This document shows, piece after piece, positions 2,233 to 50,156 of a DNA stretch of 64,000 bases; within the stretch, counting starts at the first letter, position 1, and every line of letters starts with the position of its first letter. The notes beneath the pieces are model-generated. The model saw only the letters and a list, made by a program, of their open reading frames with translations, made no database searches and was not told where the DNA came from. The stretch is from positions 124,001 to 188,000 of IMG/VR virus record IMGVR_UViG_3300035670_000008; one strand, 5' to 3'. The position numbers and the translations under genes were made by a program.

Positions 2233-5200
2233 CTAAGCTATACCTAGGAGTTGGGCGGTGGTCGGGGAGTTGGTGTCCTCCGAGATAATCTGGAAGAACT
2301 CCGCCGGAGACAGTGCGACGTTCGACCCGTCTACAAAGGCAGAGCGGATGTCTGACCGACCCGACATAGCTGTCAACGTTTCGCCGGAGTCTAGGTCTTC
2401 AGCGTCTAGTTCCTCCTCATCTCCTCCTACTAGATTCTGGGATAGATAGTTGTAGATGTTCTGGATGCCGGCGCTAACACTCTTAGCTACGTCCGCCATG
2501 AACTCGTCTTGTGTAACGGTCGTGGTAGGAATTGGTCGTTGGGAGATAACTCCCCCGACGGTCATCCCAATCAACCCGCCCGCTACCTCCGTTATTAAAC
2601 GAGCGGCGCCGGTCTGTCCCGCAACCCCAGGTACACCCGCGAAGCCGGGACGGGCTTGGTCGAAGTGCTGTCCAAGTAGCGTACCAAACGTAGCTCCGCC
2701 TGCGTAGATAAGTTCGCTAACCGCTGCTCTAGCCAGGCCCTCTGTTGGACTGCCGTAGTTCATTAGATACTGCTGCATCCGTCCGAACTGGAGTTTATCT
2801 GCGATTCTCTGGGTGCGGTCGGCAGATTGGGTGTCTTGAGATGGAGACAACAACTGGCGTAGGCTCGATCGCTCGTAGGAGCTAGCCGTAATACCAGACA
2901 TTACGACATCTAGACCTAAGCTAGTCACCTGCTCGGTAAGGGGTATGTCTCCCTGCATCATTGAGAACAACAACGGTACGCCAAGGATACTGACGCCTTC
3001 AGCTAGCCCGTGCATCCGGCTTAGGACTTCATGGCTCTCGGCGCGCTCTTTAGCCGCCCGCTGTACATCTACACTTCTTTGCGTAACGTCCATCAAATTA
3101 TCTCTCGCCTGAGTCACCTCAGCTAACGGACTAACAAAACCAGCAGCCTGTCGGTTCTCTAGATAGGTGTCTAGGTTCTCGTTAAGCTTCTGCTGCACCA
3201 CTTTCTGCTGCTCTACTAGCGCTTCTACCTGTTGTAGCTCCACTTCGCTAGTGTCGGCGGTTATCTGGCCAGTTTTCTCGGTGATAATCTGAGCCATGTT
3301 CTGAGCTAAGCCAGCCATTCCAACCTGGGTGTGGAGGTAGCTGTTGGCGGCTGCCGCGTACTCTAGGGCTCCCATCCCAGCAGTCACCGGTAATCGGTTC
3401 ACTTCTGGCACTGGAGCGGTCGGGCTTGCGGTCGGAGTTTCAACTCCCCCGTAGGTGAGGGCCTGCACTACCTTCTGTTGGAAGTCAATCATCTGGTCTG
3501 GGGTTAGGTTAGCGCCGGCTTCGGACATCATCTGTTGAACGCTGTCTGGTATGGCTCCACCTAACGCTAGAGCAGCGAATACTCCTTTTACTTCTTGATG
3601 GCTTAAACTACCGCCACCGGCAATCTGGCTCTTAACGGCGTCTACAATAGCAGTGACATTATGAGCGAAGGCTTTCGGCAGGGCCTCCCCAGATAACTTA
3701 CCTGCGTCGAGAGCGTATTGTTGGGCACTGAACTCCATAGCCAACGAATTGAAGCTATCGCCGTGTGCTACCAGGGCCTTAGCTAAATTAGTTGTACCCC
3801 CACTGTCTTGAATTTCTGCTACCGCTCGGTTGAACGCTTTGAGCCGGTTCATCATTGGCATCATCAAATCCGTCTGTTGGGAGATACTATGCTCCACCAA
3901 ACTACCGATGACGGCTTTGGTTAACGTCTGTTCACTTAGCTGAGCCCCAGGATTCTCAGGAGTTTGTACGGCTGTGAGTTCCTGTTGGATAGCTGCACTC
4001 ATCGCAGACTGCTGCTCTCGCAGTTTAGCTAGCTCCGTCTGCTGTCTGGCTTCTAGTCCGGCTACGATTTTGTCGGCGGTGTCTACGTTTAGATATTTAT
4101 CCCGTAGTAGCAGCGTGCCTTTACCTTTTATCCGAGCTACTTTCTGTTTAGTAGAGAGACGCTCATCATCTAAAGTATTCTGTATCTCATCTAGAAAGCG
4201 AACGGGCTCAGTTTCTGAATCACCTATCTTAACGTCTAGGTAACTCTGAACGTCTTTGATATAAGACTCCATGCTGGCCAACGTCAATTTACTATCATCG
4301 ACGATCTGACCCTGCTCGTTCACTCCATAGATGTCTAGAGCTTTCCGAGTCACGTCGATGTGGATGTTCTTCATCCCTTCCAACATCGCGTCGGAGATGA
4401 AGTTGGCTTGGAACTTATTCATCATATCCGACAGTACATAAGTCGTTAACTTAGCGTCGTCGATACGCCCGTAGGTAGCTACGCGGGCTTTGATGTGTTC
4501 TGGTAGTGTGCCATCGTCTAGGGCCTTCTGGTAGCTCGCTTTGATAGCTTTCAGCGTACTGCCATAGGAGCTGTTTTCCATGAGGTTAGCTGCGCTATCT
4601 CCTTTACCACTGACGTAATCAGTCAATAATCGCAGAGCGGCAAAGGCCGTTAATCCTTCCGTCTCCTGAACGGAAGGCCCTCTAGTGTCAACTCCATACT
4701 GGTATTGCAGGGCGCTGTTAGCTACCGTGCCTAAGAAGTCTTGACTAACGATTTGAATGAAGCTCTTGCGTTGGTCGTGGTCGGTATAGCGAGACTCCAT
4801 CTGGAGGATATTGGTGTAGCCAACTTCTTTAGAGATAGCTTCCCGGTCGGTGATTCCGATCTCTTTAAGTTCGTCTAGAGCAGACTCACTGATTCGATAG
4901 GACTCAATCCGGCCACTTAGACCGCCCGCCTGTTTCGGTTTCAAGGCGGCGTCCCGGAGATACTGTTGGGTGGTGACCAAGAACCGGTAGCTAACGGCGT
5001 TCCGTTCTTCTGTTTCCCGCATGGCGATTCGCCAGGGGATTATCTCTTCCGTCGTATTATCTACCGCTTCTTGAGTCAACATGGACTGCATTCTGGTTAA
5101 AGCATCTCCCACAGCTGCGTCTGCGTTCTGTTGGATGGCACCAGTAAAGCCCCTCTCAACGGCTGCGTTGAATCCAGCGGTTAGGTCTTTATCCAAAAGC

Positions 5201-8200
5201 ATTCGCTTGAAGCTGATGTCAGCCGATAGCCCACTGCTGATAGGTACGACAGTGTTGTACACCTTACCAAGTAGCGAGCCCCCGGTAATCCCCATGATGG
5301 CCTGCATCGAGCCGAAGTTCTCTGGGTCGGTTACAGTACCCCGCACGTTAGCGAACACCTTATTAACGCTCATCATCGACATTACCGTCGACTCCATCTG
5401 AGCTTGATATTCGGACACCGCCTGGACGTAGTCGTCTTTGGTGTAGCTACCTTTATCTAAGTAGGCTTGGTAGAAGGAGCCAGATTGCTCAAATTGACCA
5501 GACCAATACTCGAAGTTCTCCCGGACGCGGGTCTGCTTCTCGTTGGACAGTTTACCGAAGCCTTCATCCCAAGTTAAGGAGCCTTGTTGGAGCCTGCCGT
5601 CTGTGTCAAACTCAGCAGCATTAATATGAGAGTATTTACCTAACTCCCCGCCCATCAACCCAGTATCGAAGTTGAAGCCGGATAAGGTGTCTACGAACTG
5701 CTTGATTAAGCCGCGTAGCGCCTCGTCTTTAAAGACGGTGTTCTCCGCAATCTCCTTACTACCAATGACTTGTTCTGGCAGCGCTAAGAAGCTGCCGATG
5801 TAGCTACGCAACCCTTCGTAGGCTCGGTTTATCTTCGAGGTTCGGGTGGCTTCTACCTCGCCTAACGCTGCTTTAATCGTCTGCGTAGCGACGGATTTAA
5901 AGTTTTCTGCTTGTTGAATGGACGCAGCCTTCTCGGCCAGCTGCTCTTCTAAAGATTCAACCAAAGCAGGAACTGGGGTTGCCATATTTCTAGCTTTTAC
6001 TAGAGCAGCTTCTATCTGCTCTTTCTCTCTGGATAATCGGCGTAGCTCTACAGTCCGCTGAGCAATCTCCCCGGTCATGTTATTGACTCGGCTGAGGGCG
6101 GCTTGGAAGGAGTCCCCGTCGTAGTCTCCTAAACCAGTAAACTCAAAACCGAAGGCGCTGACTAACATCAAGGCAGAAGCCGAGGTCTCATTAGAGGTTA
6201 GGAAGGTGTTTAGCTCCCGACCCCGTCGGTTCGTTTCTGTAATCTCGATGGCTTGTTTAAAGAGGCTGTTGATTGACTGCCCATCGGTTGGGTTGCTGGT
6301 ATAGAACGGTGCCCCTTGACGGCCTGTTAGGACAGCCCCTAGCCCAGCTCGGTACTCAATCTCATTCTGGACTTTAGCTAGGTTCTCCTGGTTAACTGGT
6401 TGACCACTGATAACGGAGGCAACGATGATGTCGATGTTCTCGTTGTTAACCAGCCGACGGTGTAAGTCTTCCGGGGTGATGTTTGCACTTTCGTTTCCGT
6501 AGTGGTAAGCGTAATCTCTTAGTAGCTTTGCCCACTCACGTAGCTGACTGTTATACTTCGCCAGGTCGGGATAGTCTTGGTATATCTCAGCTTCTTGCTT
6601 CAACAGCCGAACGGTTTGTTGGTCTACTGAGTCAACGACAGCTCCAGTGCTGGGATTTATTATATCCTCGACGCCAGCATACAGCTGCCTAGAAGCTATT
6701 TCAGTTTCGTATTGATTTACTGTGTCTTGGCTTAGCGACCCCATGTAGGCATTGGCTTGGTCTAACCTTGCTTGTTCTACTGGGACATAACGAGCCGTTG
6801 GGTTATTAAGTTGCGCGGCTGCGCGTTCGATGGTTAACTTGCTCTGCTGGTACTCCAACAGATTCTCTGCTACAGTCTGACGGCCTTTAGCGGCTTCTTT
6901 GGTCAGTCCATAATCAATATTCAACCGGAAGTACTCGGGACCCCCGTAAGCAGTACGTTGGGATTCGACGTAACCAATAGCGGCTTCAACCTGGGCTAAG
7001 CGGCTTTGCAGCTCGGCTTGGTTACCTAACACTGATACACCTGATTGAAGTTCGTCGTATTGTCTTTGAGTTAGTTTGTTACTTAGTCCTGTACCTTGGA
7101 TGAAGGTTTCTTCCGCAGTGTAACCGCCAGCTAACCGCCGTTCCAAGTTGGCTTTGATTTCATTTAGCCGGTCAACGATAAAATCGATGTTCTTACCGTC
7201 TTCCTTACCGTAGGCAACTGCTCTAAGCCGGTTAGTGTAATCTATAACCTCCTGCATCTGAGCTAGGTTAGCTGCCTGCTGTTGTGGAGAGCTGGAGTCA
7301 TATTGTACATATCCCCAGCCGATGTACTTCTGCAGCTTTAATTCACTTTCGATAACGTTCTGATAAGCCTTGTGCTCTTCAGACAACCCAGCGTGGGCAG
7401 CCTGGCGAGCTGGTAATTCCGCAGACTTCTCAGCTATCTTCGTGTCTAACTTTCCAATTTCAGTTTTTATTGCGGCTAACTCACCTGGAAGCTTAGTAGT
7501 GTTATCGGCTTGATACCCTTCTAACTCAGTTACTTTATCTCTCATGCCTCCAATTTTTTGGGTGAGGTTCTCAACCTGCCCGGTGAGATACTGGGGCCAA
7601 CCGTCTTCGTTATAGAAGAATGAATTGTCTGGTATTGGCATCCCAACTGGAACGGCTTCAGGGCCTCTTAACCCTAGGTCAGCAACCATAATATTACTTC
7701 TGGCTCTAGCCTGTAGTTGATTTGCTCTTTTCAGCTTGGCATAGAGGCTGTCACCTTGTTCTATAGGGAACAAGACGCTAGCCGCCTTCTGCCTAGCTTT
7801 AACGCCGTCTATACTCTGAGCGTCAAGGTCAGCATCCCCGAACATAAGTGCGCCAAAGAAACCTCCAAATTCACCTCTAGATAAGTATGCAGCTCTTACC
7901 ATCGGAAAGCGGCTATCTCTAACGGTGTTTAGTTGCTGCTCACTTGGATTGAATAAGAAGTTGGTGTAACCTTTGATGTCTGATTGGGTCATTAGCCGCT
8001 CGGTCACGGCGTCTAACCGAGTTAATGCACCTACGTTTTCGGGGGTGACCGTTTGGTTTACACCTAGGTCAGCCAGCCCCGCATTGATATTAGTAAGGAT
8101 GTTGGGTAGTCTGGTGTTGTTTATCTCGTTATAGGCACCCTCTAACGTAGGTATCATATTGTCTACCGCGGCTAACAAACTCTGCCCCCGCGGAGTCAGT

Positions 8201-11200
8201 TGGTTTACAGCTATACGTCCGGTAGCTTGACTAGCTGGGACTACTTCAAAGAGTGCCCTGACGTTATCGTTTACCTGCGCAGCGAACTCTCTTTGTTCTT
8301 GTTGACTGAGTTGATTTAAGTCACTCGGCATATTGGAAGGTATAATACTTCCTTGGGCTACGCTGTTATACCTTGTTAGATGCTTCTCTAAAAACCGCAT
8401 TTGCCCGATAAAGTCCCGTGCGGAGTAGGGCGGCACTTCGTCGGTAAGTCCTATAGCATTTTCTATTGAAAAGACAATTTTATCGTGGTAGGTATCTCCA
8501 AACTGGTTTTGGTTGGTTAGCGTATTAATTTTACGACCTATAGCAGGCAGTACTCTGCTGTTAAGGTTCTGGTAGGTGCTGGCTTGGTTTAAGAGCCAAT
8601 TCCATTTATTATCTACGTTCCGTCTTGCCCGCTGAACTCTGGTGTTGTGTCCCTCTCCTGATTGGTCGTAGGGGTTTCTGATGTCGTAGTAGCGGTAATA
8701 GTTTAGGCTGGCTTGTTGTGTGCGGATATACGCTTCTTGCTCAGCAATTTTTTGCTGTTTATCGACGACTTGAGCTTCTTTCTTAGCGATAGCTGCATTT
8801 TTCTCGTTGATTCTCTGCTGCAGCTCCATCTGGTTTTTAACGTAGCCGCTTCTTGTGTTGTAGTGATAAGCTATCTGCTTACTTCTTTTAGCCTCTAACC
8901 GGCTGATTTCATCCTGTCTATTCTGCAGGGATTCGCCCGATACACCAAAGTTGAGCCGGTCACGCTGTTTAATAATGGTGTTCTCGCCTTTAATGTAGCC
9001 AAGGCTAACGTCTAGGTTTCTAATCCGCTGCTGGTTAACCTTCTGCTCTTCTATGAAGGCAAGCTGTGTTTTGACTGGGTTTTCTGTGCCTAAAGGTACT
9101 ACTCCACTTAGATAGGTGTTTCTTACTTCTACTAGACCCTTAGCTGAACGTAAAGCGTTCTCGATAGTATCTCTATCACCAGAGATTTGGGCTTGCCGTA
9201 GCTTTTGAATCACCGACTCGACTTCGTTCTTAACAGTGCCATCCGTCAGCTCTTGCAGTAGTTCTTGAGCGTATTCAATTTCGTTGGTAATCGTCAGTTC
9301 CATCAGAATCTGACCCTTACTTCCTAAAGCAGCAGCTAAGCGGATGGCTTTAACATCCTTCCTGATAGATTTATCGATGGACGAACTTAGCCGGCGGATA
9401 CCGTTTCCGGCAGTCAGCCCCGCTGCCCGCTCCACCCGGGAGCCCATTCCTACCTCGTCCATCCCGACCAGGAAGCTGTTGACGGCTATATAGGAGGTAC
9501 CGCTCATCCCCATCCGGTTGGCGGTGGCCTGGCGGATGCTGTTTTTGTTGTGTACGAGTTCTACCGCCGTCTCTTTCGACTGCTGCATTAATACCTGCAG
9601 TTCTTGGAGCTCTACAACCTCTTCGTCAGTAATTGTGGAGGTGCCGACACCTTGTAACGCTCCGAGTTGAATCTTATCAATCACGGGCTGTAAGCGTTGT
9701 AGCTTCGCTACTAATTTGAACTGAGCTTCCAATGCCGGGTGGGACTCAGCGTTAAATAGTAGGCTGAGCTTCTGTAGGATATCTAAACCAAGTAACACCC
9801 CTGTCTGAGCGTTACGGTCTGAGCCTACAGTAACTACGTTTAGCCCCCGGCCCTGAGTATCCAAACTATGACGGTCTAATATCTCAATACTTGGCAGGCT
9901 AATCATCCGCGTTGTGCTTAACGATTGCATAATCGTCTTAGCTGACTCGCGTTGTAGTCTCCCTTCAAAGTCGCCTTTATTCCGGTAGTACTCGAACTGC
10001 TGCTGTGCTGATTGGTATAGAGACTCCATACCTTCTAAATATTCCGCGCCAGTATTCATATTGAAGGTATTTTCCACTCGCGTTCTGACTTGCTCCCGGT
10101 AAGTCTCGGTTATGGCATTTAACGCTGCATTCGTAGCTAACGCGCGTGTCCCGGTAGCATTATAGTTTCTCAGATATTCTTTCTGGTAAAGAATATCCTC
10201 ACTATCCTGGTCGTATAGGTGGGTCGTGTTGAGACTGGTATTAATTGGAGACTCCTGCCGAGAATACAACCTATCTAGAAACTCCTCCATGTTAAACTCG
10301 GCTATTCCCAGTTTTGCTTCTTCTAACCGGGTCTCTAGTGCTGCCATAAACGTGGGGTTGTTGGCAGCTTTATGTCTGAACTTTCTGTCCAGCCGAGTTC
10401 TAGTTTCTTCGAGGACTAAGTCAACTCTGCGGTTGATATTAGCCTCGTAGTCTAGGTTATTACCCAGGTTACGGCGAGTGATGTCTGCATAGTCCATCAT
10501 CTGCTGCAGGGCAGGTAGATAGCTGTTACTGTCCTGCTTTTGGTGACCTTGTTTAATAAACTCACTAACGGCTTTAGTCCCTAACGTTCTAGTCTCTACC
10601 CTTCCTGATGAATCAACGTTGCCTGGTAGCTGATGCCGTCCGAAGCTTGTGTAGTGAGTTAGGTACGTATTGATAAAGTCGTAGGTAGTGTTCTGTCCAA
10701 GAGAGAGGCTTAATCCTAGGCGTTTAGTTGTGATATCTTCGTTAAACACCAACGCGGAGAGGTCTGAGTTAATAGCCCGATGCTCCGTAGCGTTAGTTAT
10801 TAGTTGCGGAGTCAACCCTAATTCTGTTTGAGCGATATGTTGCACAACAGCGGCATCCCCGAGGTTGTGCTTCATAATCCCGTAGCTGTCTTGGACTTGA
10901 CGGTGGGTAGGGACAACGTTCTCGTAGACGATGGCTAATTGAACCAAGGCATGTTGAATTGTACCGACGTCGGTCAAATCTTTCGGGTTATAAGCATACA
11001 TCTCTAGTTGCTTAGCAGTTAAGCCTTGGGCATAGTGTCCTTCTAACGCAGTGATATTCTTCATCCCCGCAGGCACTGCGAGTTTACTCGGCTCATACTC
11101 GCCAGGTAATTCAATAAACCGCTGGGTCTGAACGTAGGTGCGGATAGCTTGGTAGACCGCTTCCACCTCATGGAGCATCTGCTCTTCTTCAGAGGTGATA

Positions 11201-14200
11201 GTTTGGTTCTGCTTCAGTTTATTCAGAACGCCTTTGACTTTGTCGGCGTCTGGAAGGGTATATCTAAAGCGGCGGGCAACCTCTTCAATCCCAACGCTTA
11301 GTTTCTCCCCAAGGTGACCAAACTTACCGTATAGCTCCAGGGCTGTGTAGGTGGCGAGCTTCGTCTTCTCACCGTATTTCAATAGCCGCTTTTCACCATC
11401 TTCGCCTTTATCGTCTTTACCGTAAGCCGTCAGCAGGTCTTGAAGCTGCTGGTCAGCGTTACTAACTCCAGAGTCAGTCAGATTCCGTTTTATATCGGTC
11501 TTGAGCGCTTCTATCTGCTTCTCTTGTTGGCTACGAACATCGGCTAACTTACCGCTTACTGACGCGGCTATCAGCTGTATCGTAGCTTCGTCTGCATTGG
11601 CTAAGAAGCTTTGACTGGATGACTGGCCTGCCAGCTCATCTAGAGTCCGTCGGACGATACTGTGGTCTTCGCCGACCGCAGTCAAGTCGTCAGGACTAAT
11701 ATTGAATAACCCAATGCTTTGTGATTGAGCTGCTAGTCGGCTAATCTGCTCGTTTGTTCTTTGTTCGGCTGGGGTGTTTAAGGCATCTTGTAGTGTACGT
11801 AGGTAGTCAGCTACACTTTCAGGGCCTTGACGAGCTAACCGCTCGTTATGTTCGGTCAGGTCAGTTCCCGCTAATTTGTGTAGCTCTCGGATGAGCTCAG
11901 TTGTTTCGTGCCGGCGTAAGGTGGCGCCTAGGTTGGCTTTATAATCCCCAGACCCTCTAATTGTTTCGTGCAGTTTCTTCAGATACCCATCGGCGTCTGC
12001 ATCTAGTTCAGCATTGAACATACTCCGGGAGTCCAAGCTAACCTCAGAGAAGCCCATTGCATTCAGCCGGTCTTGAACGTCTACGTTGCGGTAGATGTCC
12101 TGGGACGCCTTTAATAAGAAGGCCAACAGCCCGGCTGGGCGAGTCGTAAAGTCATCTAAGTGGGTGTAGATGTCTTTGCCATGCTCTTGTCCAGTCTTTA
12201 GGCTCTTGGCTTCGGTGAACAACGTATCGAATAACTGTTGGGTACCAGACTGTAACTTATTCAAAGCATCATCATCGCCTGTTAAGGCGGAGATAACTTG
12301 CTGGGTTAACGCGCTCTCTAAAGTCTCACCTTCTCCAACACCGCCCACTAAAGCAGCTAAGCCAGAGTAGAAGCTTAAAGAAGACTTCAACTTGCTGTCG
12401 TTTGCTTTACTTTTTACTGGGCGTAACCGCAACGCCTCCGCGTACTGAGAGCGATTCTCTGCGTCGTGGGTCGTTAGGCTGGTGCGGAGGGCCTCTTTAA
12501 GCCCCTCAATGTTGGTTGAATCGTCGAAGGTCATTAGTAGCATTGCTAATGCTTCCGCGATGGCTCTACCTCCTTTAACCTTGGAATCCCCTTTACCTGT
12601 AATTAGCTCGTAGATACCGCTTTGCTGTTGCTCTTCTAGCAGGCCTAACCCCATATCGAAGTTGAAGCCCTTGATTTGACTAGTAGATAGCATCGCAAAG
12701 ACGTCTTGCGCGGCTACGCGGGTGGGTAAGAGGTGCTTCGTACCTTCAGTAAAGCCGGCCAAGGCTTCCCATAAGGCCCCCTCGGCTGTCCGCATAGGCC
12801 CTTTAGACATCGTGGTACCTGGACGCATGGCGTCTCGGTCGGCTTTAATCGTCTGGGTGTTGAGGTCTAAGGTTACGGTATTCCGTCGACTAACGTTAAC
12901 TCTGGAGTCTGACACAACGGTAATCCCTTCACCGAGTTCACGACCCGCCATAGCCGGCAGCCGGAACAGCATCGGTCGTACCTGGCTGTCTCCTGTCGAA
13001 CTGCTGTAGTTAAATAGGTTCTTAATGGTGAACGCCATGGAGTTCTCTTTGACTTCACCAATTTTCTCCATAGAGGCTAGGTATTGAGCTGGCTCCAGCT
13101 GGACGTCCTTTCCGTCTGAATCTTTCTGTACGTCGGGCGGGCTATAAACCCCTTTGCGGTAGTAAAAGCCTACTTCATCCGAGCCACGGGAGATATCTAT
13201 GCGAAGGTTATCGCTGTTCAACGACTGGATAGAGTCTATAACCAGTCGATGGACGTCTCTGGCGTCAAGACTGTCACCTACAGCGAGCCGAACGCTCTCT
13301 ATAAAGTTGCCAATATTAAGCTTACCTTTGGGGTCAGCTAAGCCTACTGGGGTTACACCCAGCTCAGCTAGTCGGCTGGTCACCTCAGTCGTCACCTGTT
13401 TATTCAGGCTATTTAGAACATCGGTTAGTTCGACTTTAAGGTCTTTAGCTAAAAAGATAGTCCCTGGCTTTAGTTTGTCGTTGATTTCTTTCTGTAGGGC
13501 AGCCGGGTTAGCTGAGAAGGAGTCTAACGTAGCTGTGGCCTGGACAACGTGGGGTTGAACATATCTCAGGTCATTGTACTTAGAGTTTAAGAGACCGTAG
13601 TCAGATAACTGAGACGCCCCGGTACCGATGACTACCCTTCTGGGGGTCTTACCGCCGATGAAGCCTTTGATAATCTGCTTCTGGTCTTCACTCAACTCTA
13701 CAGCCACCCGTCGCAGCAGTTGGGGGTCGGGGTTTCTTAACAGGTCAGCGTCTTCGGCAGTGTTATCTGGATGGAGCCGCTTAAATTCTCTTAGATATTC
13801 ATCCTTTAAATAATCGAACTGCTGTCGGCTTAGACTACCAAGAATACTGCCGCCTAAAGACGATGGTGCGTCTCCCGCGTTGTAGCTACCAACACTCCCG
13901 AAACTCAAGGCGTATTGAACGAATTCCTTTGAGGCCTCGTAGATAGGTCGAGTGGAGGTTAGGTTCTTCATCCGTTGGCTGATTTGCTCAGACTTAGCAA
14001 ACGGGAAGAAATATAACAGCTGGTCTAGGTTACCTTCCTCGTCTAACTGACCGTTTGGAATAGCATTACCTTGCTCGTCGTACTTAGGTAAAAGCCTACC
14101 ATCGTAACTAGTCTGGTAGTCTCGCTCGTAACGACTGAAGGTTATCTTAGCTAACCGTTCTGCTTCTGCTTTAGCCTCGTCTTTGTTTCGTCCGGCCTGT

Positions 14201-17200
14201 TCCAGAAGAGCGGTCGTCTCCTTGATATACTCACTCTTTTTAATAATGCTGAGCCCGGGCATACTCTGCATCAAACCCATTAGGTTGTGAACGACCGGAG
14301 CCCCGCCCTCTAGTTTCAACAGCCCGCCGTAGCGAACGTAGGCGTCTTGGAACTTAAGTCTACCGGACGAAGCAACGGCTCGGAGGTACTCGCCTGAGTA
14401 GGCCCCCAGGCCTTCCCCGTGCATTAACGCGTAGGGGCTCATAACAAAACCGGTAGTCTCTCCACCTCGGAGGTAGTCAAAGACGTTCGCAATCTGCTTG
14501 TCTTCGCCGTATACCGGCAGGCGGTGGATACCTTGACCAAAGGAGTAGTTCGTTTCGTGGGGTTGAGGGAAGATGTCTACTTGGTTGCTAAACGCCTCTT
14601 TCTTCCCTTTCTCTACCTCGTTTTTATAGATAGCCGCCAACACCGGATTGGAGTTGATGGTCTGCATAATCAAATCATTATAAATACCGCTATAACCTAA
14701 GCCGCCTTGGGTGCGTAGCCCCATACTGACGGATTCAATCACCCGGTCGGTAATGGTAGAGGTGAACTTAGCTACCTGTTGATGAATGGCTTCACCGCTG
14801 GTAGAGCTACCCACCATCGACATTAATCCCTCAACAAAGACGTCAACCGCCTTAGTCATCTGCTCTCTTCTCAAGCCGGCTAACGCTTCAGTCTTGGAGT
14901 AACCAGGGACGTATTGGTCGTAGTCTGCTAAAGCCCCACCTAACATATCGGTTAGTTGAGTTTTAAACGCTACCTTAGCCTTTATCCGGTCTTTAGCCGA
15001 GCTGCCGGCTAGCTGCTCGATTAAGCCCTTGGAGACATTCTCTAAGTCGATGTTCTCTTTATTTTTATTCAGACTGTAGCCTAACCCTTTGCCAATCTCG
15101 GCGAAGTTAGCTCCGATCAGTTTCCGTAGGTTGGTCTGAAAGACTCCTTTGTCTAAGTTACCGAAAGTAGTGTGAACACCACGAATTTGGTACTCATACT
15201 GCATGGAGTGATACATCGTGGTCACTAAACCACCTAAGACATCGAATGCCCCGGCTTGGTAGCTATCTCCGTGGCGGAGAGTCTTATCTACGACTTTGCC
15301 TTCTCTAGGGTCATAGACTTGATAGGTCTTGGCGTCGCCAGAACTATTCTTATAGACCATGCCGGCTAGCATCCGCTGAGTCTTGTTTAGATAGACGACA
15401 GGCTCCATGCCGTCCTTATAACGGGAGTTGATGGTCTGCTCTCCCCCGAAGGTTACGTCAAAGGAGTAACCTGGCTGCCCCTGAATCGGACTAGCAATCT
15501 GGATTGTCGCCCCGACTAACTTAGCCTCTCCTTCACCAACGAGATACCGGCGGCTAAAGATAAACTTGGGCATCTTACTGGGGTCGGTGCTTTCCCAAAC
15601 GCGGGCTTCCTTCCCGCCCATCTGCTGCAGATAGGCCAGGCCCTGCTCAGCGATTGCCGAGTTTCCTCGTCGTTCGACTAACAAGCCTTGATAGTCCTTC
15701 CCGCCCCTTAGATTTAACCCAAAGCGGCTGTAGCCATGTAGGTAGGTATTGGCAATATCGTCCTGCTCCTCCGTAGAGAGAAGGTCTAAAGAGTTCGCAC
15801 TGGTTTTATCTAAGAACAACATCGTCTCAATGTTGTTTTCGTAGGCCTGCTTTGATAGGTTAGCCGACCCAATCCCATAAGACTTTAGTTTATTATTCTC
15901 ATCCAAGACAGCAAACGACTTACTGTGCATGAACTGAGACGGCATCAGTGTAAAAGCGTTGTTCTCTAGTAGGGTTTTAATTAGTCCGTGTCGTTCCTTC
16001 TGATTCTCGGTTCTAGAACTCTCAGCTATTTTGTCGACTGCGTAATAGTTGTCTAATAAGGCAAACAACCCTAGGTCTGGCTTATAACTTGTAGCTGTGA
16101 TTCCAATACTTAATCGTCCGCTTTCCGCTAAGGTCTTCAAAGCCTCGAAGCCGGACGCCTTAACGCTAAAAGGCGTGCCCGACATATTTTTATTAGGGTC
16201 TAACATCTGTTCAATGTATTGAACAGACATAATAGCTTTGTCCTTTCCGTCAGCTGCGGCTCGGCCTAGACGGTCAGACATCTGTTCGTGGATGTCTTCG
16301 TTAACGTATAGAGCTTTGTGACCAGCGCCAGTAGCCACAAGGTTGTTTTCGTATAACGTTTTAAACCGGTCCCTTAGATTGTTAGGATCTCGGTCTCCAG
16401 TATCGTGCTTATTATCTTGTAGACTTAATAACGCATCGGTGGCTGCTTTAATCTGTTTGCTAACCGCGTCGAACGAAGCACGTTGTTTAACAGCCCATTG
16501 GTTGTGCTCTTCGTCATCTAATTTGAATGCTGCTCGATTGATAACCAGCATTTCTTCAATGGTGGTGCTTTGGTCTAAAGCTGGTGTGTAGTTTTGGGTG
16601 GAGATGAAGAACTTAGTAATCTGCTCTTGTTGACCCTGACCTTCATAGAAATAACCAAGCTTGGCGTGGATAGACCCGGTGTTCATATACACTGGTTTTA
16701 TCCGGGCGTCGGCTTGTCCGTTGTATAGCTGTGAAGCTCGTACAGCTAAGTCGTTACCTCCGTAGATACTGGCACGGGTAAAGTCGTCCTGGGCATCTGA
16801 CGCGGCTGAATACCCTTGTGTCCCTATCACCGTTGCACCAGGACGAGTAACTAAGGCAGCCAGCGCGCTAGTGTTCTGCATCTGGTAGACGTAGCCACGA
16901 AAACCTAGATTTCTGTTTTCCTCACCTGCGAACATGGCGAAGATATCTAAGTTACTTGGTCTACCAACTAACCCACTCGGACTCTGGTAATGCCGGGTTT
17001 GTTGAGTCAGCCGGTTACTGATGTTATCTATCGAACGGTTGAGCCGCTGAGCGCCATACTCTACTGCGCGAGTCAGCCCCTGGTTGAGATAACCTTGGTC
17101 GTACTCCGCTATCTTAAGTCGGTTAGCGGTGGTGTCTACATTCTGTTTCTGGTCAGCACTAACCTTATTTCGCTCGTCTTCTGCTTGTTTAAAGCGGCGC

Positions 17201-17571
17201 TCAAACTCCTTAGAGTAATTCTGAATACCTCGGAATGGATCGGTAGCATTAGTGACGAAGTTCGTCCAGAACTTATGGTCAACGTTGACTTCACCGTCAG
17301 TGTTTGCGTTCAGTGACCAACTGCTTAGGTTGGTGGCTACCTCTGGGTAGATTGCAACGTAGTCTTCAAGCGGGATTGATTTTAATAACTCTTTAGGCAG
17401 GCTTTCCCCTGCGTCTTTCAACGCCTGCTCTAAGAGGTTAATAAAAGACTGATATGTTGTAAGTAATGTCTCGTCCGCTACTAGGGACTGCTTTACCGGA
17501 CCGTTTACCCTGGCATCCTCGCTTAGGTAGGTAATTAAGTCATAGTAGTTTTGAATAGAGTAAGTAGACAT
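2233..17571 (-). CDS. Giant virion protein (5112 aa): N-terminal PLD-family domain, two-barrel RNA polymerase, and a helical/hydrophobic tape-measure-like C-terminus
   Basis: Single uninterrupted ORF. PLD motifs HAK (H302) and HSK...GSAN (H549). RNAP motifs LSDYGLL (D1324), K1576/K1590, RMGMSGTSYI (R2686), VLTGRQGAP (R3751), GDYDGD (3815-3820) and LLGKVYN (4102-4106). It lies downstream of the tail-assembly-chaperone genes and upstream of gpU-like and baseplate genes. Confidence 0.8.
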   Translation of the reverse strand: MSTYSIQNYYDLITYLSEDARVNGPVKQSLVADETLLTTYQSFINLLEQALKDAGESLPKELLKSIPLEDYVAIYPEVATNLSSWSLNANTDGEVNVDHKFWTNFVTNATDPFRGIQNYSKEFERRFKQAEDERNKVSADQKQNVDTTANRLKIAEYDQGYLNQGLTRAVEYGAQRLNRSIDNISNRLTQQTRHYQSPSGLVGRPSNLDIFAMFAGEENRNLGFRGYVYQMQNTSALAALVTRPGATVIGTQGYSAASDAQDDFTRASIYGGNDLAVRASQLYNGQADARIKPVYMNTGSIHAKLGYFYEGQGQQEQITKFFISTQNYTPALDQSTTIEEMLVINRAAFKLDDEEHNQWAVKQRASFDAVSKQIKAATDALLSLQDNKHDTGDRDPNNLRDRFKTLYENNLVATGAGHKALYVNEDIHEQMSDRLGRAAADGKDKAIMSVQYIEQMLDPNKNMSGTPFSVKASGFEALKTLAESGRLSIGITATSYKPDLGLFALLDNYYAVDKIAESSRTENQKERHGLIKTLLENNAFTLMPSQFMHSKSFAVLDENNKLKSYGIGSANLSKQAYENNIETMLFLDKTSANSLDLLSTEEQDDIANTYLHGYSRFGLNLRGGKDYQGLLVERRGNSAIAEQGLAYLQQMGGKEARVWESTDPSKMPKFIFSRRYLVGEGEAKLVGATIQIASPIQGQPGYSFDVTFGGEQTINSRYKDGMEPVVYLNKTQRMLAGMVYKNSSGDAKTYQVYDPREGKVVDKTLRHGDSYQAGAFDVLGGLVTTMYHSMQYEYQIRGVHTTFGNLDKGVFQTNLRKLIGANFAEIGKGLGYSLNKNKENIDLENVSKGLIEQLAGSSAKDRIKAKVAFKTQLTDMLGGALADYDQYVPGYSKTEALAGLRREQMTKAVDVFVEGLMSMVGSSTSGEAIHQQVAKFTSTITDRVIESVSMGLRTQGGLGYSGIYNDLIMQTINSNPVLAAIYKNEVEKGKKEAFSNQVDIFPQPHETNYSFGQGIHRLPVYGEDKQIANVFDYLRGGETTGFVMSPYALMHGEGLGAYSGEYLRAVASSGRLKFQDAYVRYGGLLKLEGGAPVVHNLMGLMQSMPGLSIIKKSEYIKETTALLEQAGRNKDEAKAEAERLAKITFSRYERDYQTSYDGRLLPKYDEQGNAIPNGQLDEEGNLDQLLYFFPFAKSEQISQRMKNLTSTRPIYEASKEFVQYALSFGSVGSYNAGDAPSSLGGSILGSLSRQQFDYLKDEYLREFKRLHPDNTAEDADLLRNPDPQLLRRVAVELSEDQKQIIKGFIGGKTPRRVVIGTGASQLSDYGLLNSKYNDLRYVQPHVVQATATLDSFSANPAALQKEINDKLKPGTIFLAKDLKVELTDVLNSLNKQVTTEVTSRLAELGVTPVGLADPKGKLNIGNFIESVRLAVGDSLDARDVHRLVIDSIQSLNSDNLRIDISRGSDEVGFYYRKGVYSPPDVQKDSDGKDVQLEPAQYLASMEKIGEVKENSMAFTIKNLFNYSSSTGDSQVRPMLFRLPAMAGRELGEGITVVSDSRVNVSRRNTVTLDLNTQTIKADRDAMRPGTTMSKGPMRTAEGALWEALAGFTEGTKHLLPTRVAAQDVFAMLSTSQIKGFNFDMGLGLLEEQQQSGIYELITGKGDSKVKGGRAIAEALAMLLMTFDDSTNIEGLKEALRTSLTTHDAENRSQYAEALRLRPVKSKANDSKLKSSLSFYSGLAALVGGVGEGETLESALTQQVISALTGDDDALNKLQSGTQQLFDTLFTEAKSLKTGQEHGKDIYTHLDDFTTRPAGLLAFLLKASQDIYRNVDVQDRLNAMGFSEVSLDSRSMFNAELDADADGYLKKLHETIRGSGDYKANLGATLRRHETTELIRELHKLAGTDLTEHNERLARQGPESVADYLRTLQDALNTPAEQRTNEQISRLAAQSQSIGLFNISPDDLTAVGEDHSIVRRTLDELAGQSSSQSFLANADEATIQLIAASVSGKLADVRSQQEKQIEALKTDIKRNLTDSGVSNADQQLQDLLTAYGKDDKGEDGEKRLLKYGEKTKLATYTALELYGKFGHLGEKLSVGIEEVARRFRYTLPDADKVKGVLNKLKQNQTITSEEEQMLHEVEAVYQAIRTYVQTQRFIELPGEYEPSKLAVPAGMKNITALEGHYAQGLTAKQLEMYAYNPKDLTDVGTIQHALVQLAIVYENVVPTHRQVQDSYGIMKHNLGDAAVVQHIAQTELGLTPQLITNATEHRAINSDLSALVFNEDITTKRLGLSLSLGQNTTYDFINTYLTHYTSFGRHQLPGNVDSSGRVETRTLGTKAVSEFIKQGHQKQDSNSYLPALQQMMDYADITRRNLGNNLDYEANINRRVDLVLEETRTRLDRKFRHKAANNPTFMAALETRLEEAKLGIAEFNMEEFLDRLYSRQESPINTSLNTTHLYDQDSEDILYQKEYLRNYNATGTRALATNAALNAITETYREQVRTRVENTFNMNTGAEYLEGMESLYQSAQQQFEYYRNKGDFEGRLQRESAKTIMQSLSTTRMISLPSIEILDRHSLDTQGRGLNVVTVGSDRNAQTGVLLGLDILQKLSLLFNAESHPALEAQFKLVAKLQRLQPVIDKIQLGALQGVGTSTITDEEVVELQELQVLMQQSKETAVELVHNKNSIRQATANRMGMSGTSYIAVNSFLVGMDEVGMGSRVERAAGLTAGNGIRRLSSSIDKSIRKDVKAIRLAAALGSKGQILMELTITNEIEYAQELLQELTDGTVKNEVESVIQKLRQAQISGDRDTIENALRSAKGLVEVRNTYLSGVVPLGTENPVKTQLAFIEEQKVNQQRIRNLDVSLGYIKGENTIIKQRDRLNFGVSGESLQNRQDEISRLEAKRSKQIAYHYNTRSGYVKNQMELQQRINEKNAAIAKKEAQVVDKQQKIAEQEAYIRTQQASLNYYRYYDIRNPYDQSGEGHNTRVQRARRNVDNKWNWLLNQASTYQNLNSRVLPAIGRKINTLTNQNQFGDTYHDKIVFSIENAIGLTDEVPPYSARDFIGQMRFLEKHLTRYNSVAQGSIIPSNMPSDLNQLSQQEQREFAAQVNDNVRALFEVVPASQATGRIAVNQLTPRGQSLLAAVDNMIPTLEGAYNEINNTRLPNILTNINAGLADLGVNQTVTPENVGALTRLDAVTERLMTQSDIKGYTNFLFNPSEQQLNTVRDSRFPMVRAAYLSRGEFGGFFGALMFGDADLDAQSIDGVKARQKAASVLFPIEQGDSLYAKLKRANQLQARARSNIMVADLGLRGPEAVPVGMPIPDNSFFYNEDGWPQYLTGQVENLTQKIGGMRDKVTELEGYQADNTTKLPGELAAIKTEIGKLDTKIAEKSAELPARQAAHAGLSEEHKAYQNVIESELKLQKYIGWGYVQYDSSSPQQQAANLAQMQEVIDYTNRLRAVAYGKEDGKNIDFIVDRLNEIKANLERRLAGGYTAEETFIQGTGLSNKLTQRQYDELQSGVSVLGNQAELQSRLAQVEAAIGYVESQRTAYGGPEYFRLNIDYGLTKEAAKGRQTVAENLLEYQQSKLTIERAAAQLNNPTARYVPVEQARLDQANAYMGSLSQDTVNQYETEIASRQLYAGVEDIINPSTGAVVDSVDQQTVRLLKQEAEIYQDYPDLAKYNSQLREWAKLLRDYAYHYGNESANITPEDLHRRLVNNENIDIIVASVISGQPVNQENLAKVQNEIEYRAGLGAVLTGRQGAPFYTSNPTDGQSINSLFKQAIEITETNRRGRELNTFLTSNETSASALMLVSAFGFEFTGLGDYDGDSFQAALSRVNNMTGEIAQRTVELRRLSREKEQIEAALVKARNMATPVPALVESLEEQLAEKAASIQQAENFKSVATQTIKAALGEVEATRTSKINRAYEGLRSYIGSFLALPEQVIGSKEIAENTVFKDEALRGLIKQFVDTLSGFNFDTGLMGGELGKYSHINAAEFDTDGRLQQGSLTWDEGFGKLSNEKQTRVRENFEYWSGQFEQSGSFYQAYLDKGSYTKDDYVQAVSEYQAQMESTVMSMMSVNKVFANVRGTVTDPENFGSMQAIMGITGGSLLGKVYNTVVPISSGLSADISFKRMLLDKDLTAGFNAAVERGFTGAIQQNADAAVGDALTRMQSMLTQEAVDNTTEEIIPWRIAMRETEERNAVSYRFLVTTQQYLRDAALKPKQAGGLSGRIESYRISESALDELKEIGITDREAISKEVGYTNILQMESRYTDHDQRKSFIQIVSQDFLGTVANSALQYQYGVDTRGPSVQETEGLTAFAALRLLTDYVSGKGDSAANLMENSSYGSTLKAIKASYQKALDDGTLPEHIKARVATYGRIDDAKLTTYVLSDMMNKFQANFISDAMLEGMKNIHIDVTRKALDIYGVNEQGQIVDDSKLTLASMESYIKDVQSYLDVKIGDSETEPVRFLDEIQNTLDDERLSTKQKVARIKGKGTLLLRDKYLNVDTADKIVAGLEARQQTELAKLREQQSAMSAAIQQELTAVQTPENPGAQLSEQTLTKAVIGSLVEHSISQQTDLMMPMMNRLKAFNRAVAEIQDSGGTTNLAKALVAHGDSFNSLAMEFSAQQYALDAGKLSGEALPKAFAHNVTAIVDAVKSQIAGGGSLSHQEVKGVFAALALGGAIPDSVQQMMSEAGANLTPDQMIDFQQKVVQALTYGGVETPTASPTAPVPEVNRLPVTAGMGALEYAAAANSYLHTQVGMAGLAQNMAQIITEKTGQITADTSEVELQQVEALVEQQKVVQQKLNENLDTYLENRQAAGFVSPLAEVTQARDNLMDVTQRSVDVQRAAKERAESHEVLSRMHGLAEGVSILGVPLLFSMMQGDIPLTEQVTSLGLDVVMSGITASSYERSSLRQLLSPSQDTQSADRTQRIADKLQFGRMQQYLMNYGSPTEGLARAAVSELIYAGGATFGTLLGQHFDQARPGFAGVPGVAGQTGAARLITEVAGGLIGMTVGGVISQRPIPTTTVTQDEFMADVAKSVSAGIQNIYNYLSQNLVGGDEEELDAEDLDSGETLTAMSGRSDIRSAFVDGSNVALSPAEFFQIISEDTNSPTTAQLLGIA
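4933..13644 (-). other. Two-barrel (double-psi beta-barrel) RNA polymerase region within the 5112-aa protein
   Basis: Beta-like then beta'-like motifs occur in the expected order. The catalytic DxDGD motif is encoded at 6112-6126. Boundaries are approximate. Confidence 0.75.
15800..16950 (-). other. PLD-superfamily domain (two HxK half-sites) within the 5112-aa protein
   Basis: IHAKLGYFY...FFISTQNYT (His at 16666-16668) and FMHSKSFAVLD...YGIGSANLSKQAYENNIETML (His at 15925-15927). Domain boundaries are approximate. Confidence 0.8.
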
Positions 17572-18980: not shown

Positions 18981-20450
18981 ATGGCTGACATAACTTATCC
19001 CGACAAGCGCTCCGTTCGTAAGCAGACAAAACAGCAAGGTCGTTACAACCTATATAACGCGCTTCGCCGACCGCTGATGTCGAAGCTACGGTTATACGAA
19101 CGTATGGCTCGCCAAGACTTAACAATCCGTTCAGCCCTTAACACCCGGGTAGATTCAATTATTGGAACGATTGGAGATGTCATACACCCAGACGAAGAGA
19201 TTCAAGAGTTTCTTAGAGACAGCCTTAAACGCCTAGAGGATGGTTCGGGTAGAAACTTTAAGTCGTGCCTACGAAATATTCAGTTCACAACAGACTGGGC
19301 AGGCTTCTCTGTGTCAGAGGTCTGCTATGCCTTCGAGAAAGGGCAGTTAGTGTTAGACAACGTTCTAACTTATCACCCTTCTTCCTTAGTCATCTATCCA
19401 AATAAGAAAGGTCTCCTAGTGGACGGGGAGGAGACAATGGATGGCTACCACAAATCAGGTATCTATCAGTATGCACTTAACTACGCTCCAGCGGAGCAGC
19501 AGCTAGACCTGTGGAAGCATATCTACTTAGGGCGGGATTGTGACTATGGCAACTACTATGGACATTCGTTGGTAGCTCCGGCTTACAAGTGGTTCCGGCT
19601 AAAAGAGGTGCTAATCGAGATGATGATTAGTGCCATGAACAAGTTAGGCAACCGACTACTGTGGATTCGCTCGCATAATACTCCTACTGAGGAGCTGGTG
19701 CTTAACCCAGCGACAGGAGAAGAGCGCCCTTTAACAACGCTAGAGTTAATTCGTAATCAGATTGAATCTAACGAGGGGGCTTTAGACACCCTGTTATTGC
19801 CGCAGGTCTCGCCGGACTACAAACCTGAAGTCGGCTCGGTGCAGATGTCTGATAACTTTGGGGATACCTTCTTAAGCACGTTAGCTTACGTTGACCAAGA
19901 GTCTGTTAGACACATCATCCCTTACTTCTTATTAATGGATAACAACTCCAACGAGTCGGCTCGGGAACGCCGGATGGAGATTTACTTTAATGATGTCTAC
20001 AATCAACGAGAAGCTTTGATTAACGCTGCAGTAATGAAGATTCTTATGCCGCTTCAGACCTGGAACTTCTCCAAGGCTGCAGCAAAGATTCCGCCGACGT
20101 TTGCCCGAGTCTACTCCGACAGACCAGAAGACCGCGTAGCCACAATGCAGATGGTTACCGGACTGACGGAGAAAGGTTATCTCAACCCAACTCACCCAAT
20201 GGATTGGAGCATGGTTCGGGAGATGTCCCGCTTGGCTAACCGGGATATGGAAGACGCAGATATCGAGTTTATTAATCAGGTCGTCATCGAACCTCTCCAG
20301 AAGCCGGAGCCAGCTCCTGGGTCGGAGGTCGTTAAGAAGCCAACGGCTGGAAGACCGAAGGGAGTGTCCAAACCAATCAGCGGGCGTCCCCCAGCTAAGC
20401 CAGCCTCGAGCGGCTCAACGACTAAGAAAAACTTGAAGGCCGGAGGGTAA
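18981..20450 (+). CDS. Portal protein (Mu gp29 / DUF935-like, 489 aa)
   Basis: Features include GFSVSEVCY, 'LTYHPSSL', 'GHSLVAPAYKWFRLK', a helical core and a basic low-complexity tail. It heads the head module, upstream of the protease and capsid genes. Confidence 0.8.
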   Translation: MADITYPDKRSVRKQTKQQGRYNLYNALRRPLMSKLRLYERMARQDLTIRSALNTRVDSIIGTIGDVIHPDEEIQEFLRDSLKRLEDGSGRNFKSCLRNIQFTTDWAGFSVSEVCYAFEKGQLVLDNVLTYHPSSLVIYPNKKGLLVDGEETMDGYHKSGIYQYALNYAPAEQQLDLWKHIYLGRDCDYGNYYGHSLVAPAYKWFRLKEVLIEMMISAMNKLGNRLLWIRSHNTPTEELVLNPATGEERPLTTLELIRNQIESNEGALDTLLLPQVSPDYKPEVGSVQMSDNFGDTFLSTLAYVDQESVRHIIPYFLLMDNNSNESARERRMEIYFNDVYNQREALINAAVMKILMPLQTWNFSKAAAKIPPTFARVYSDRPEDRVATMQMVTGLTEKGYLNPTHPMDWSMVREMSRLANRDMEDADIEFINQVVIEPLQKPEPAPGSEVVKKPTAGRPKGVSKPISGRPPAKPASSGSTTKKNLKAGG

Positions 20451-50100: not shown

Positions 50101-50156
50101 CTTTAGTCCACTTAGGAAGTAACGAATGGTTATTGGCGGGAGACCTTAAAGCGTAG
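47136..50156 (+). CDS. Collagen-like tail fibre protein (1006 aa)
   Basis: Multiple Gly-X-Y runs ([12 protein letters not shown]) separate repeated globular modules. The C-terminal domain ends ...[16 protein letters not shown]. Confidence 0.85.
47958..48038 (+). repeat. Tandem 18-bp repeat ggtatacaaggtgagcag (GIQGEQ) in the fibre gene
   Basis: Four 18-bp units (the last ends CAA) and one 9-bp half unit. A related ggtatccaaggggagcag pair lies near 47310-47345. Confidence 0.9.

What the first reader, a model, noticed from the sequence alone, without database searches (positions are those of the whole stretch)
15800..16950. Intact-looking PLD-family enzyme at the N-terminus of the virion RNAP/tape-measure giant
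Seen: two HxK half-sites in one chain, HAK...STQN (H302, K304) and HSK...GSAN (H549, K551), so no dimerisation is needed. The Asp of HxKxxxxD is missing from the first site and shifted by one in the second. Known: the PLD fold covers lipases, nucleases (Nuc, BfiI, Zucchini) and tyrosyl-DNA phosphodiesterase Tdp1; variant HKD motifs are frequent in the nucleic-acid-acting members. Inference: the domain is ejected with the protein. It may breach a membrane, nick or resect incoming DNA to create a template for the fused RNAP, or process RNA/DNA ends. I do not know of a described PLD-RNAP-tape-measure fusion.
Basis: partly seen in the sequence, partly recalled or inferred. Interest (0 to 1): 0.78.

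Follow-up and report, generated by a model that had tools for sequence, protein, structure and literature searches.

The report
PLD enzyme domain in phage giant
The start of a 5,112-residue protein of a 216-kb contractile-tailed phage carries a complete, two-lobed phospholipase-D-type phosphodiesterase domain whose catalytic residues are invariant in all ~38 related giant phage proteins, but its substrate (most likely nucleic acid, possibly membrane lipid) is still unknown.

Summary

Nearly all homologues are 3,000-5,400-aa giants with the domain at the same N-terminal place. Every full-length one has a single GDxDGD motif. The family includes Microcystis phages Ma-LMM01 and MaMV-DC. The gene lies between the portal/capsid genes and a baseplate-wedge gene.

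Not supported: the "tape-measure" label. The gene is outside the tail module, which has its own 1,111-aa candidate.

Shown only at motif level: RNA polymerase identity. Inferred only: ejection into the host.

The weak sequence matches are to nuclease-type PLDs (NucT, Zucchini, DrmC, NgoFVII). I favour a metal-independent nucleic-acid phosphodiesterase. A membrane phospholipase is the main rival.

This is a new variant of a known kind. UniProt already labels the Ma-LMM01 protein automatically as PLD-domain-containing.

The parts
2233..17571 (-). Giant ORF, 5,112 aa. It belongs to a family of 3,000-5,400-aa phage proteins.
   Evidence: ORF list. 36 cluster representatives in the exhaustive HMM search and two more. 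Conserved blocks run along the whole length.
15682..16974 (-). Two-lobed PLD-superfamily domain, aa ~200-630.
16555..16668 (-). Half-site 1: H302, K304, (T325) Q326, N327, T329, E339.
   Evidence: These residues are invariant in 36/36 homologues.
15826..15927 (-). Half-site 2: H549, K551, S569, N571, N580, E582. D557 lies at H+8 and is not conserved.
   Evidence: H, K and N are invariant in the 33 sequences that reach this part; S569 and E582 are present in 31. The motif aligns to NucT and Zucchini GSxNxSxxAxxxNxE.
16249..16503 (-). Helical insert between the two lobes (aa ~357-441), variable in the family.
   Evidence: Secondary structure of the model shows helices at model residues 158-215 and 226-242. 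Only ~290-300 of 441 residues align to compact PLDs.
6112..6129 (-). G3815-D-Y-D-G-D3820, the single DxDGD motif of the protein.
   Evidence: One GDxDGD is present in each of 27 + 2 full-length homologues and in MaMV-DC ORF82L.
6307..6321 (-). Invariant R3751-x-G-A-P3755 upstream of DxDGD. It resembles the 'R.P' element of beta-prime-type double-psi barrels.
   Evidence: Alignment A3 and the full-length alignment. Comparable strings RNPVMG...DFDGD in the P23-45 TMP and RIPNQG...DFDID in gp66 were read. This is motif level only.
6322..9324 (-). Roughly 1,000-aa stretch (aa 2750-3750) that most homologues lack.
   Evidence: Column occupancy is 0.2-0.5 in the full-length alignment.
1667..2197 (-). 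Gene directly downstream on the same strand: a baseplate wedge 3 tail-fibre-network component.
   Evidence: PF25691, 31.9 bits against a cut-off of 27. phrog_1394, virion structural protein. The same neighbour is present in relative L005.
18981..20450 (+). Portal gene, divergent from the giant's operon. Protease (21903-22958) and major capsid protein (22999-24291) follow it.
   Evidence: PHROG hits. The same giant/portal/protease/capsid arrangement is seen in L003, L004, L005, MaMV-DC and Ma-LMM01.

Best explanation
Residues ~200-630 of the giant protein form a catalytically competent single-chain PLD-superfamily phosphodiesterase. Two homologous lobes, an old internal duplication, each give a His, Lys, Asn and Glu (plus Thr or Ser) to one pseudo-symmetric active site at the lobe interface. 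By the chemistry established for this superfamily, one His (H302 or H549) attacks a phosphodiester and forms a phospho-histidine intermediate. The other His protonates the leaving group. Water or a hydroxyl then resolves the intermediate, and no metal or nucleotide cofactor is needed. The domain is a fixed part of a family of 3,000-5,400-aa proteins of large contractile-tailed phages. These proteins are encoded inside the virion-structural gene block, and each also carries one invariant GDxDGD motif. I infer that the giant is packaged and delivered with the DNA. I also infer that the PLD module acts on a nucleic-acid phosphodiester at or just after entry (nicking, end-processing or degradation of DNA or RNA) next to the polymerase-like module. 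Shown: the motifs, their conservation, the fold, the fusion and the gene context. Inferred: catalytic activity, substrate, packaging and ejection, and polymerase function.
Against: No activity or substrate is shown. The closest structural neighbours include lipid enzymes (PssA, cardiolipin synthase, PLD) as well as nucleases, so the fold does not settle the substrate. The nuclease-type sequence matches are weak, with E values of 1e-2 to 1e-8, and touch only the C-lobe motif. The domain is not consistently basic: median pI is 6.7, and 5.6 in this phage. No proteomic proof of packaging was found. In the cultured relative Ma-LMM01, host transcript levels barely change and early genes carry sigma-70-like promoters (PMC5780444). 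This argues against wholesale host nucleic-acid degradation and against a strict need for a virion polymerase. This phage also encodes a sigma-70-family protein. The His-His geometry was not measured directly.
Confidence: 0.6

Rival explanations
1. The domain is a true phospholipase or transphosphatidylase. It is delivered by the contractile tail and hydrolyses or remodels host membrane phospholipid to open a path for the DNA and for the giant protein itself. This would be analogous to the PLD-type (Tle5, PldA/PldB) effectors of type VI secretion.
Against: All sequence-level matches outside the generic PLDc_2 model are to nucleic-acid-directed members: NucT, Zucchini, NgoFVII, DrmC and REase_II. 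The giant has no hydrophobic segment that passes a 19-residue Kyte-Doolittle threshold of 1.6. The domain is fused to a module with a polymerase-type DxDGD motif rather than to tail-tip proteins.
Confidence: 0.22
2. The domain is a Tdp1-like or nicking-joining end-processing enzyme. It forms a covalent phospho-histidine link to a DNA or RNA end, for example to pilot, protect or circularise the incoming genome, rather than simply degrading nucleic acid.
For: The sites are Asp-less HKN-type, as in Tdp1. Tdp1 entries are among the best Foldseek matches (E ~1e-7). Pfam Tyr-DNA_phospho touches aa 547-577 (E 0.058), and one member reaches E 8e-4. Structural neighbours include poxvirus F13, and PLD3 and PLD4, which act on nucleic-acid ends. 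Covalent intermediates are inherent to PLD chemistry (established knowledge).
Confidence: 0.1
3. The domain keeps the fold but is not an enzyme. It would be a structural, binding or assembly module of the giant protein, as debated for vaccinia F13, or a PPK1-like phosphoryl-transfer module.
For: F13 and the PPK1 C-terminal domains are among the best structural matches. Pfam scores sit at or just below threshold for this protein.
Against: Both complete catalytic sets (H, K, N and E twice, plus T/S) are invariant across a family that has otherwise diverged to ~21-30% identity. That pattern is what purifying selection on catalysis gives. F13 and the PPK1 C-domains have degenerate motifs (established knowledge).
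Confidence: 0.06

Closest known systems
Single-chain two-lobed PLD enzymes: PLD3/PLD4 5'-exonucleases, poxvirus F13/K4 group, bacterial phosphatidylserine synthase PssA
   Different: Sequence identity is only 9-14%. A ~85-residue helical insert lies between the lobes. The HKD Asp is absent or shifted. The H-to-N spacing is longer (25 and 22 residues against 17 in the canonical motif). The domain is embedded in a 5,112-aa protein.
Nuc / NucT / Zucchini (MitoPLD) / BfiI-NgoFVII / DISARM DrmC nuclease-type PLD domains
   Same: These are the best sequence-level relatives of the C-lobe. The GSANxSxxAxxxNxE motif aligns residue for residue. Pfam RE_NgoFVII, NCBIfam DrmC and NucT, and PADLOC DrmC are hit.
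   Different: Those proteins have one HKD per chain and work as homodimers. Here two diverged lobes are fused in one chain. The N-lobe is unrecognisable by sequence search against PDB.
Tyrosyl-DNA phosphodiesterase Tdp1
   Same: Two HKN-type sites without the Asp in a single chain. There is local likeness in ...SANLSK.A.... Foldseek probability is 1.0.
Giant virion RNA polymerases: phi14:2 gp66 (crAss-like), P23-45 TMP-fused RNAP, N4 vRNAP
   Same: All are very large phage proteins encoded among structural genes. The family has one invariant DxDGD with an upstream R..P..G element, as in gp66 (RIPNQG...DFDID) and the P23-45 TMP (RNPVMG...DFDGD).
   Different: No profile or sequence similarity was detectable. 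The host phage is a myovirus with its own tail module. The papers on those enzymes that I checked do not mention a PLD domain (PMC10770324).
Microcystis phage Ma-LMM01 gp080 and MaMV-DC ORF82L (Fukuivirus), ~3,560 aa 'hypothetical proteins'
   Same: Same family and same position next to the portal and capsid genes. The N-terminal PLD domain is present (HPK...IGTMN, HVK...GSSN) with GDFDGD further on. It is the BFVD top hit, E 8.8e-13.
   Different: Only ~23% identity in the DxDGD block. It has a canonical Asp at H+7 in site 1 and Met in place of the otherwise invariant Q326. It is ~1,550 aa shorter.

Membership tests
PLD superfamily (HKD/HKN phosphodiesterases) | Two HxK...(G/S)(S/T)xN half-sites, in one chain or in a dimer | tested here: met
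   H302/K304/N327 and H549/K551/N571. They are invariant in homologues.
PLD superfamily (HKD/HKN phosphodiesterases) | Acidic residue about 11-12 positions after the Asn, hydrogen-bonded to the His (Glu122 in Nuc) | tested here: met
   E339 (N+12) is present in 36/36. E582 (N+11) is present in 31/33. It aligns with the NxE of NucT and Zucchini.
PLD superfamily (HKD/HKN phosphodiesterases) | Asp of HxK(x)4D | tested here: not met
   Site 1 has Y309 at H+7. Site 2 has D557 at H+8, replaced by G, N, S or E in many homologues. This Asp is not universal in the superfamily; it is absent in Tdp1 (established knowledge).
PLD superfamily (HKD/HKN phosphodiesterases) | Bilobed alpha/beta PLD fold | tested here: met
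PLD superfamily (HKD/HKN phosphodiesterases) | Both half-sites converge on one active site | tested here: inconclusive
   This is implied by the rigid superposition of both lobes on enzymes where it is true.
PLD superfamily (HKD/HKN phosphodiesterases) | Curated Pfam PLDc_2 threshold (27 bits) | tested here: inconclusive
   Scores are 24.8 and 26.7 bits on the protein and 27.3 bits in the six-frame search. 24 of 36 homologues match at E<0.01, best 4.6e-10.
PLD superfamily (HKD/HKN phosphodiesterases) | His-dependent phosphodiester cleavage through a phospho-histidine intermediate | not testable with these tools
   Needs enzyme assays.
Nuc/NucT/Zucchini-type PLD nucleases | One HKD per chain, active as a homodimer | tested here: not met
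   There are two lobes in one chain.
Nuc/NucT/Zucchini-type PLD nucleases | Sequence relatedness above other PLD branches | tested here: inconclusive
   They are the only PDB sequence hits, but the hits are weak (E 0.0035-0.14).
Tdp1 | Match to the Tyr-DNA_phospho family and a Tdp1-like fold above other PLDs | tested here: not met
Two-barrel (double-psi beta-barrel) RNA polymerases, for the rest of the giant | DxDxD metal-binding motif in a beta-prime-type barrel | tested here: inconclusive
   GDYDGD is invariant, with R..GAP.G upstream.
Two-barrel (double-psi beta-barrel) RNA polymerases, for the rest of the giant | Detectable homology to known members (Pfam RNAP models, gp66, P23-45 RNAP) | tested here: not met
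   No hit.
Two-barrel (double-psi beta-barrel) RNA polymerases, for the rest of the giant | Second barrel with conserved lysines | not tested
   Candidate conserved R1583, K1590-G-P and K1634 were seen and not examined further.
Tail tape measure protein | Gene between the tail tube or chaperones and the baseplate hub | tested here: not met
   The giant lies beside the portal on the opposite strand. Sheath (28822-32409), a tube-like ORF and a 1,111-aa ORF (33320-36655) occupy the tail position.

The most novel reading that the evidence does not exclude
The giant is an injected, self-contained enzyme of contractile-tailed phages. It joins a metal-independent PLD phosphodiesterase to a very divergent two-barrel polymerase. 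The PLD module would either prepare or nick the template for that polymerase, or attach covalently through phospho-histidine to a genome end to pilot or shield it. That would be a new entry and early-expression strategy for myoviruses, including the bloom-controlling Microcystis phages that are now described as lacking any polymerase.
Probability: 0.15. Interest if true: 0.8.

Novelty: new variant of a known kind. Interest (0 to 1): 0.52.

Why it matters
The PLD domain is the only recognisable enzyme module in a family of 0.35-0.6 MDa phage proteins that are otherwise unannotated. The family reaches cultured, ecologically important Microcystis phages (Ma-LMM01, MaMV-DC), so the question can be tested at the bench. 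If the domain is delivered into the cell, it would be a cofactor-free enzyme acting at the first moments of infection. No PLD-type enzyme is described in that role for tailed phages in the literature I could search. Its invariant partnership with a DxDGD motif also gives a route to deciding whether these phages, reported to encode no RNA polymerase, do carry one.

Tried and rejected
- tblastn of the N-terminal 800 aa against 50,697 phage records found nothing.
- A viral-contig scan with back-translated peptides found nothing.
- phmmer of the N-terminus against PDB gave noise only.
- The first AF2 model, built from two sequences, was useless (pLDDT 38). It was replaced by a model from a 36-sequence alignment.
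- PHROGs gave no hit for any part of the giant.
- Atlas feature searches of the middle and DxDGD blocks were uninformative.
- The PDB profile search of the DxDGD block returned only coiled-coil noise.
- hhalign of four conserved family blocks against phi14:2 gp66 and the P23-45 TMP-RNAP found nothing.
- The N-lobe profile against PDB gave no PLD hit.
- A Pfam scan of homologue P0037 did not recover the precomputed PF25869 label or anything else useful.
- A paper hit for 'PLD' in a phage Goslar preprint was a false match to 'pLDDT'.
- Net charge and pI of the domain across the family gave no consistent signal for or against nucleic-acid binding.
- The short 'stand-alone' hits (P0011, P0016) sit on 1.5-kb contigs, so they cannot show that the domain ever exists as a separate gene.
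- The chance-motif explanation was rejected.
- The idea that the giant ORF is an artefact was rejected, because conserved blocks span its length in about 30 full-length homologues.

Full report
**What is there**

The window comes from a 216.6-kb virus record estimated to be 96% complete. The finding lies in one uninterrupted ORF, 2233..17571 on the minus strand, of 5,112 aa.
- The only two HxK triplets in the first 900 aa are H302-A-K304 and H549-S-K551.
- They are followed by S324-T-Q-N327 and G568-S-A-N571, then by E339 and E582.
- Site 1 has no Asp at H+7. Site 2 has D557 at H+8.

A pattern that asks for HxK, (G/S)(S/T)xN and a later Glu occurs twice. Shuffles of the same 900 residues gave a mean of 0.0075 and never two in 2,000. 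Pfam sees only the second half, at threshold: PLDc_2 scores 24.8-26.7 bits against a cut-off of 27 and 27.3 bits in the six-frame search.

**Conservation**

The word-based search found one relative at 45% identity. Both sites are intact in it, but the site-2 Asp is replaced by Gly.

The exhaustive profile search of 1.84 billion representatives found 36 proteins. Nearly all are 3,000-5,400 aa with the match at the same N-terminal place. The short ones I checked sit on tiny contigs or are cut by contig ends. No ordinary small PLD protein reached E<0.001, so this is a separate, divergent subfamily confined to giants.

In alignments of these sequences:
- H302, K304, Q326, N327, T329, L332 and E339 are invariant in 36/36.
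- H549, K551 and N571 are invariant in all 33 sequences that reach that part.
- S569 and E582 are present in 31.

Overall identity falls to 21-30%. The Asp position drifts freely. A profile of the N-half aligns to a profile of the C-half (E 6.2e-5) and pairs H/H, K/K, N/N and E/E. The two lobes are therefore an old duplication.

**Fold**

A two-sequence model failed (pLDDT 38). With the 36-sequence alignment AlphaFold gave pLDDT 89.1 and pTM 0.90. Both lobes show the same topology: strand, HxK strand, hairpin, GSxN strand, helix, Glu strand.

| Search | Result |
|---|---|
| Foldseek against PDB | Only PLD-fold proteins on top (PPK1 C-domains, bacterial PLD, Tdp1, F13, PLD3, PssA); probability 1.0; at least 411 columns |
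| AFDB and ESM Atlas | Only two-lobed PLD proteins; TM by hit up to 0.82 |

This rigid two-lobe superposition implies a single shared active site. I could not measure the distances because coordinates are not exposed.

**Which branch of the superfamily**

Sequence-level matches outside the generic model all point to nucleic-acid-directed members:
- NucT (E 0.0035) and Zucchini (E 0.14) in PDB, with GSANxSxxAxxxNxE aligned.
- RE_NgoFVII in 5/36 members.
- DrmC in 9/36 members, and NucT for the window protein.
- DrmC, ZacB, PbeA and REase_II in PADLOC.

These matches are weak and involve only the C-lobe. Structure ranks lipid enzymes and nucleases equally. The domain is not consistently basic. 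The substrate is therefore not settled. I put a nucleic-acid phosphodiester at about one half to two thirds, and a membrane phospholipid at about one fifth.

**The rest of the giant**

Every full-length family member has exactly one GDxDGD. An invariant R..GAP.G lies about 60 residues upstream. The proven virion polymerases gp66 of phi14:2 and the P23-45 tape-measure-fused RNAP show comparable strings: RIPNQG...DFDID and RNPVMG...DFDGD.

Beyond this motif likeness nothing links them:
- Pfam, PHROGs, PDB phmmer and profile searches gave no RNAP match.
- hhalign of four conserved blocks gave no match.
- Atlas features were uninformative.

Polymerase identity is plausible but unproven.

Conserved blocks run along the whole protein, apart from a ~1,000-aa stretch (aa 2750-3750) that most relatives lack. 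There is no hydrophobic, transmembrane-like segment.

**Context**

The window holds a myovirus structural module:
- portal, 18981-20450
- protease
- major capsid protein, 22999-24291
- sheath, 28822-32409
- baseplate wedge
- collagen-like tail fibre
- large terminase

The giant is transcribed divergently from the portal. It is followed on the same strand by a baseplate-wedge-3 network component (PF25691). The same giant/portal/protease/capsid layout recurs in three metagenomic relatives, one of them with the same downstream gene. It also recurs in Microcystis phages MaMV-DC (ORF82L, 3,560 aa) and Ma-LMM01 (gp080).

The MaMV-DC protein has HPK...D...IGTMN, HVK...GSSN and GDFDGD. Its N-terminus aligns to the family profile. 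The BFVD model of Ma-LMM01 gp080, labelled 'PLD phosphodiesterase domain-containing protein', is the best viral structural match (E 8.8e-13).

This context supports a virion role but does not prove packaging. I found no virion proteome.

The 'tape-measure' label does not fit. A 1,111-aa ORF sits where a tape measure belongs, after the sheath and a tube-like gene.

**Points that temper the model**

- Papers on the cultured relatives state that they lack an RNA polymerase (PMC9927357).
- For Ma-LMM01, early genes have sigma-70-like promoters and host transcripts barely change (PMC5780444).
- The present phage encodes a sigma-70-family protein and no recognisable T7-type or multisubunit RNAP.

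Wholesale host DNA or RNA destruction is thus unlikely for this family. A strictly required virion polymerase is not indicated either.

**Novelty**

I found no paper describing a PLD domain in such proteins. Only the automatic UniProt name for Ma-LMM01 gp080 flags it.

The domain is a new, divergent, giant-specific branch of a well-known superfamily, in an undescribed fusion. I rate it a new variant of a known kind, of moderate interest. It is readily testable because cultured phages carry it.

Noticed in passing
window 33320-36655 (+): A 1,111-aa ORF lies directly after the sheath (28822-32409) and a tube-like ORF (32482-33249). This is the expected place of the tail tape measure. It has no Pfam hit and only a weak PHROG of unknown function.
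   Followed up: partly
window 6322-9324 (-), aa 2750-3750 of the giant: A stretch of about 1,000 aa is present in this protein and a few close relatives but absent from most family members. It is a lineage-specific expansion of unknown content.
   Followed up: no
window 47136-50156 (+): A 1,006-aa tail-fibre ORF with collagen-like repeats matches 55 PHROG families.
   Followed up: no
window 38529-39179 and 39034-40284 (+): Two same-strand ORFs overlap by about 146 nt, and the second has a TTG start. This may be a mis-called start or a frameshift site in the tail module.
   Followed up: no
G000:C1:85413-85622 (outside the window): The phage encodes a sigma-70-family protein in a 338-aa frame (Sigma70_r2, 53.5 bits). 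No T7-type or multisubunit RNAP model matches the genome.
   Followed up: partly
L012:10393-11226 (+) = G000:C1:122393-123226 (just outside the window): A 277-aa ORF has a C-terminal AP2 DNA-binding domain hit below threshold (25.9 bits against 33.3). Domains of this kind are often found in homing endonucleases.
   Followed up: no
L004:20642-20947 and MaMV-DC ORF77R (L002:6727-6984): PAAR-motif genes lie within a few kb of the 3' end of the giant gene in two relatives. None was looked for in the window itself.
   Followed up: no
aa 111-112 and aa 640-800 of the giant (window ~15170-15650 and ~17236-17241): An invariant Asp-Pro at 111-112 and a well-conserved block after the PLD domain (aa ~650-800, with G652, Y676, G687, G737, G758 and T785) have no family assignment.
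   Followed up: no
window 22999-24291 (+): The major capsid protein's only relatives among 50,697 phage records are cyanophages: Microcoleus phage My-WqHQDG at 30% identity and the Microcystis Fukuivirus group at 27%. This hints at, but does not show, a cyanobacterial or freshwater host.
   Followed up: partly
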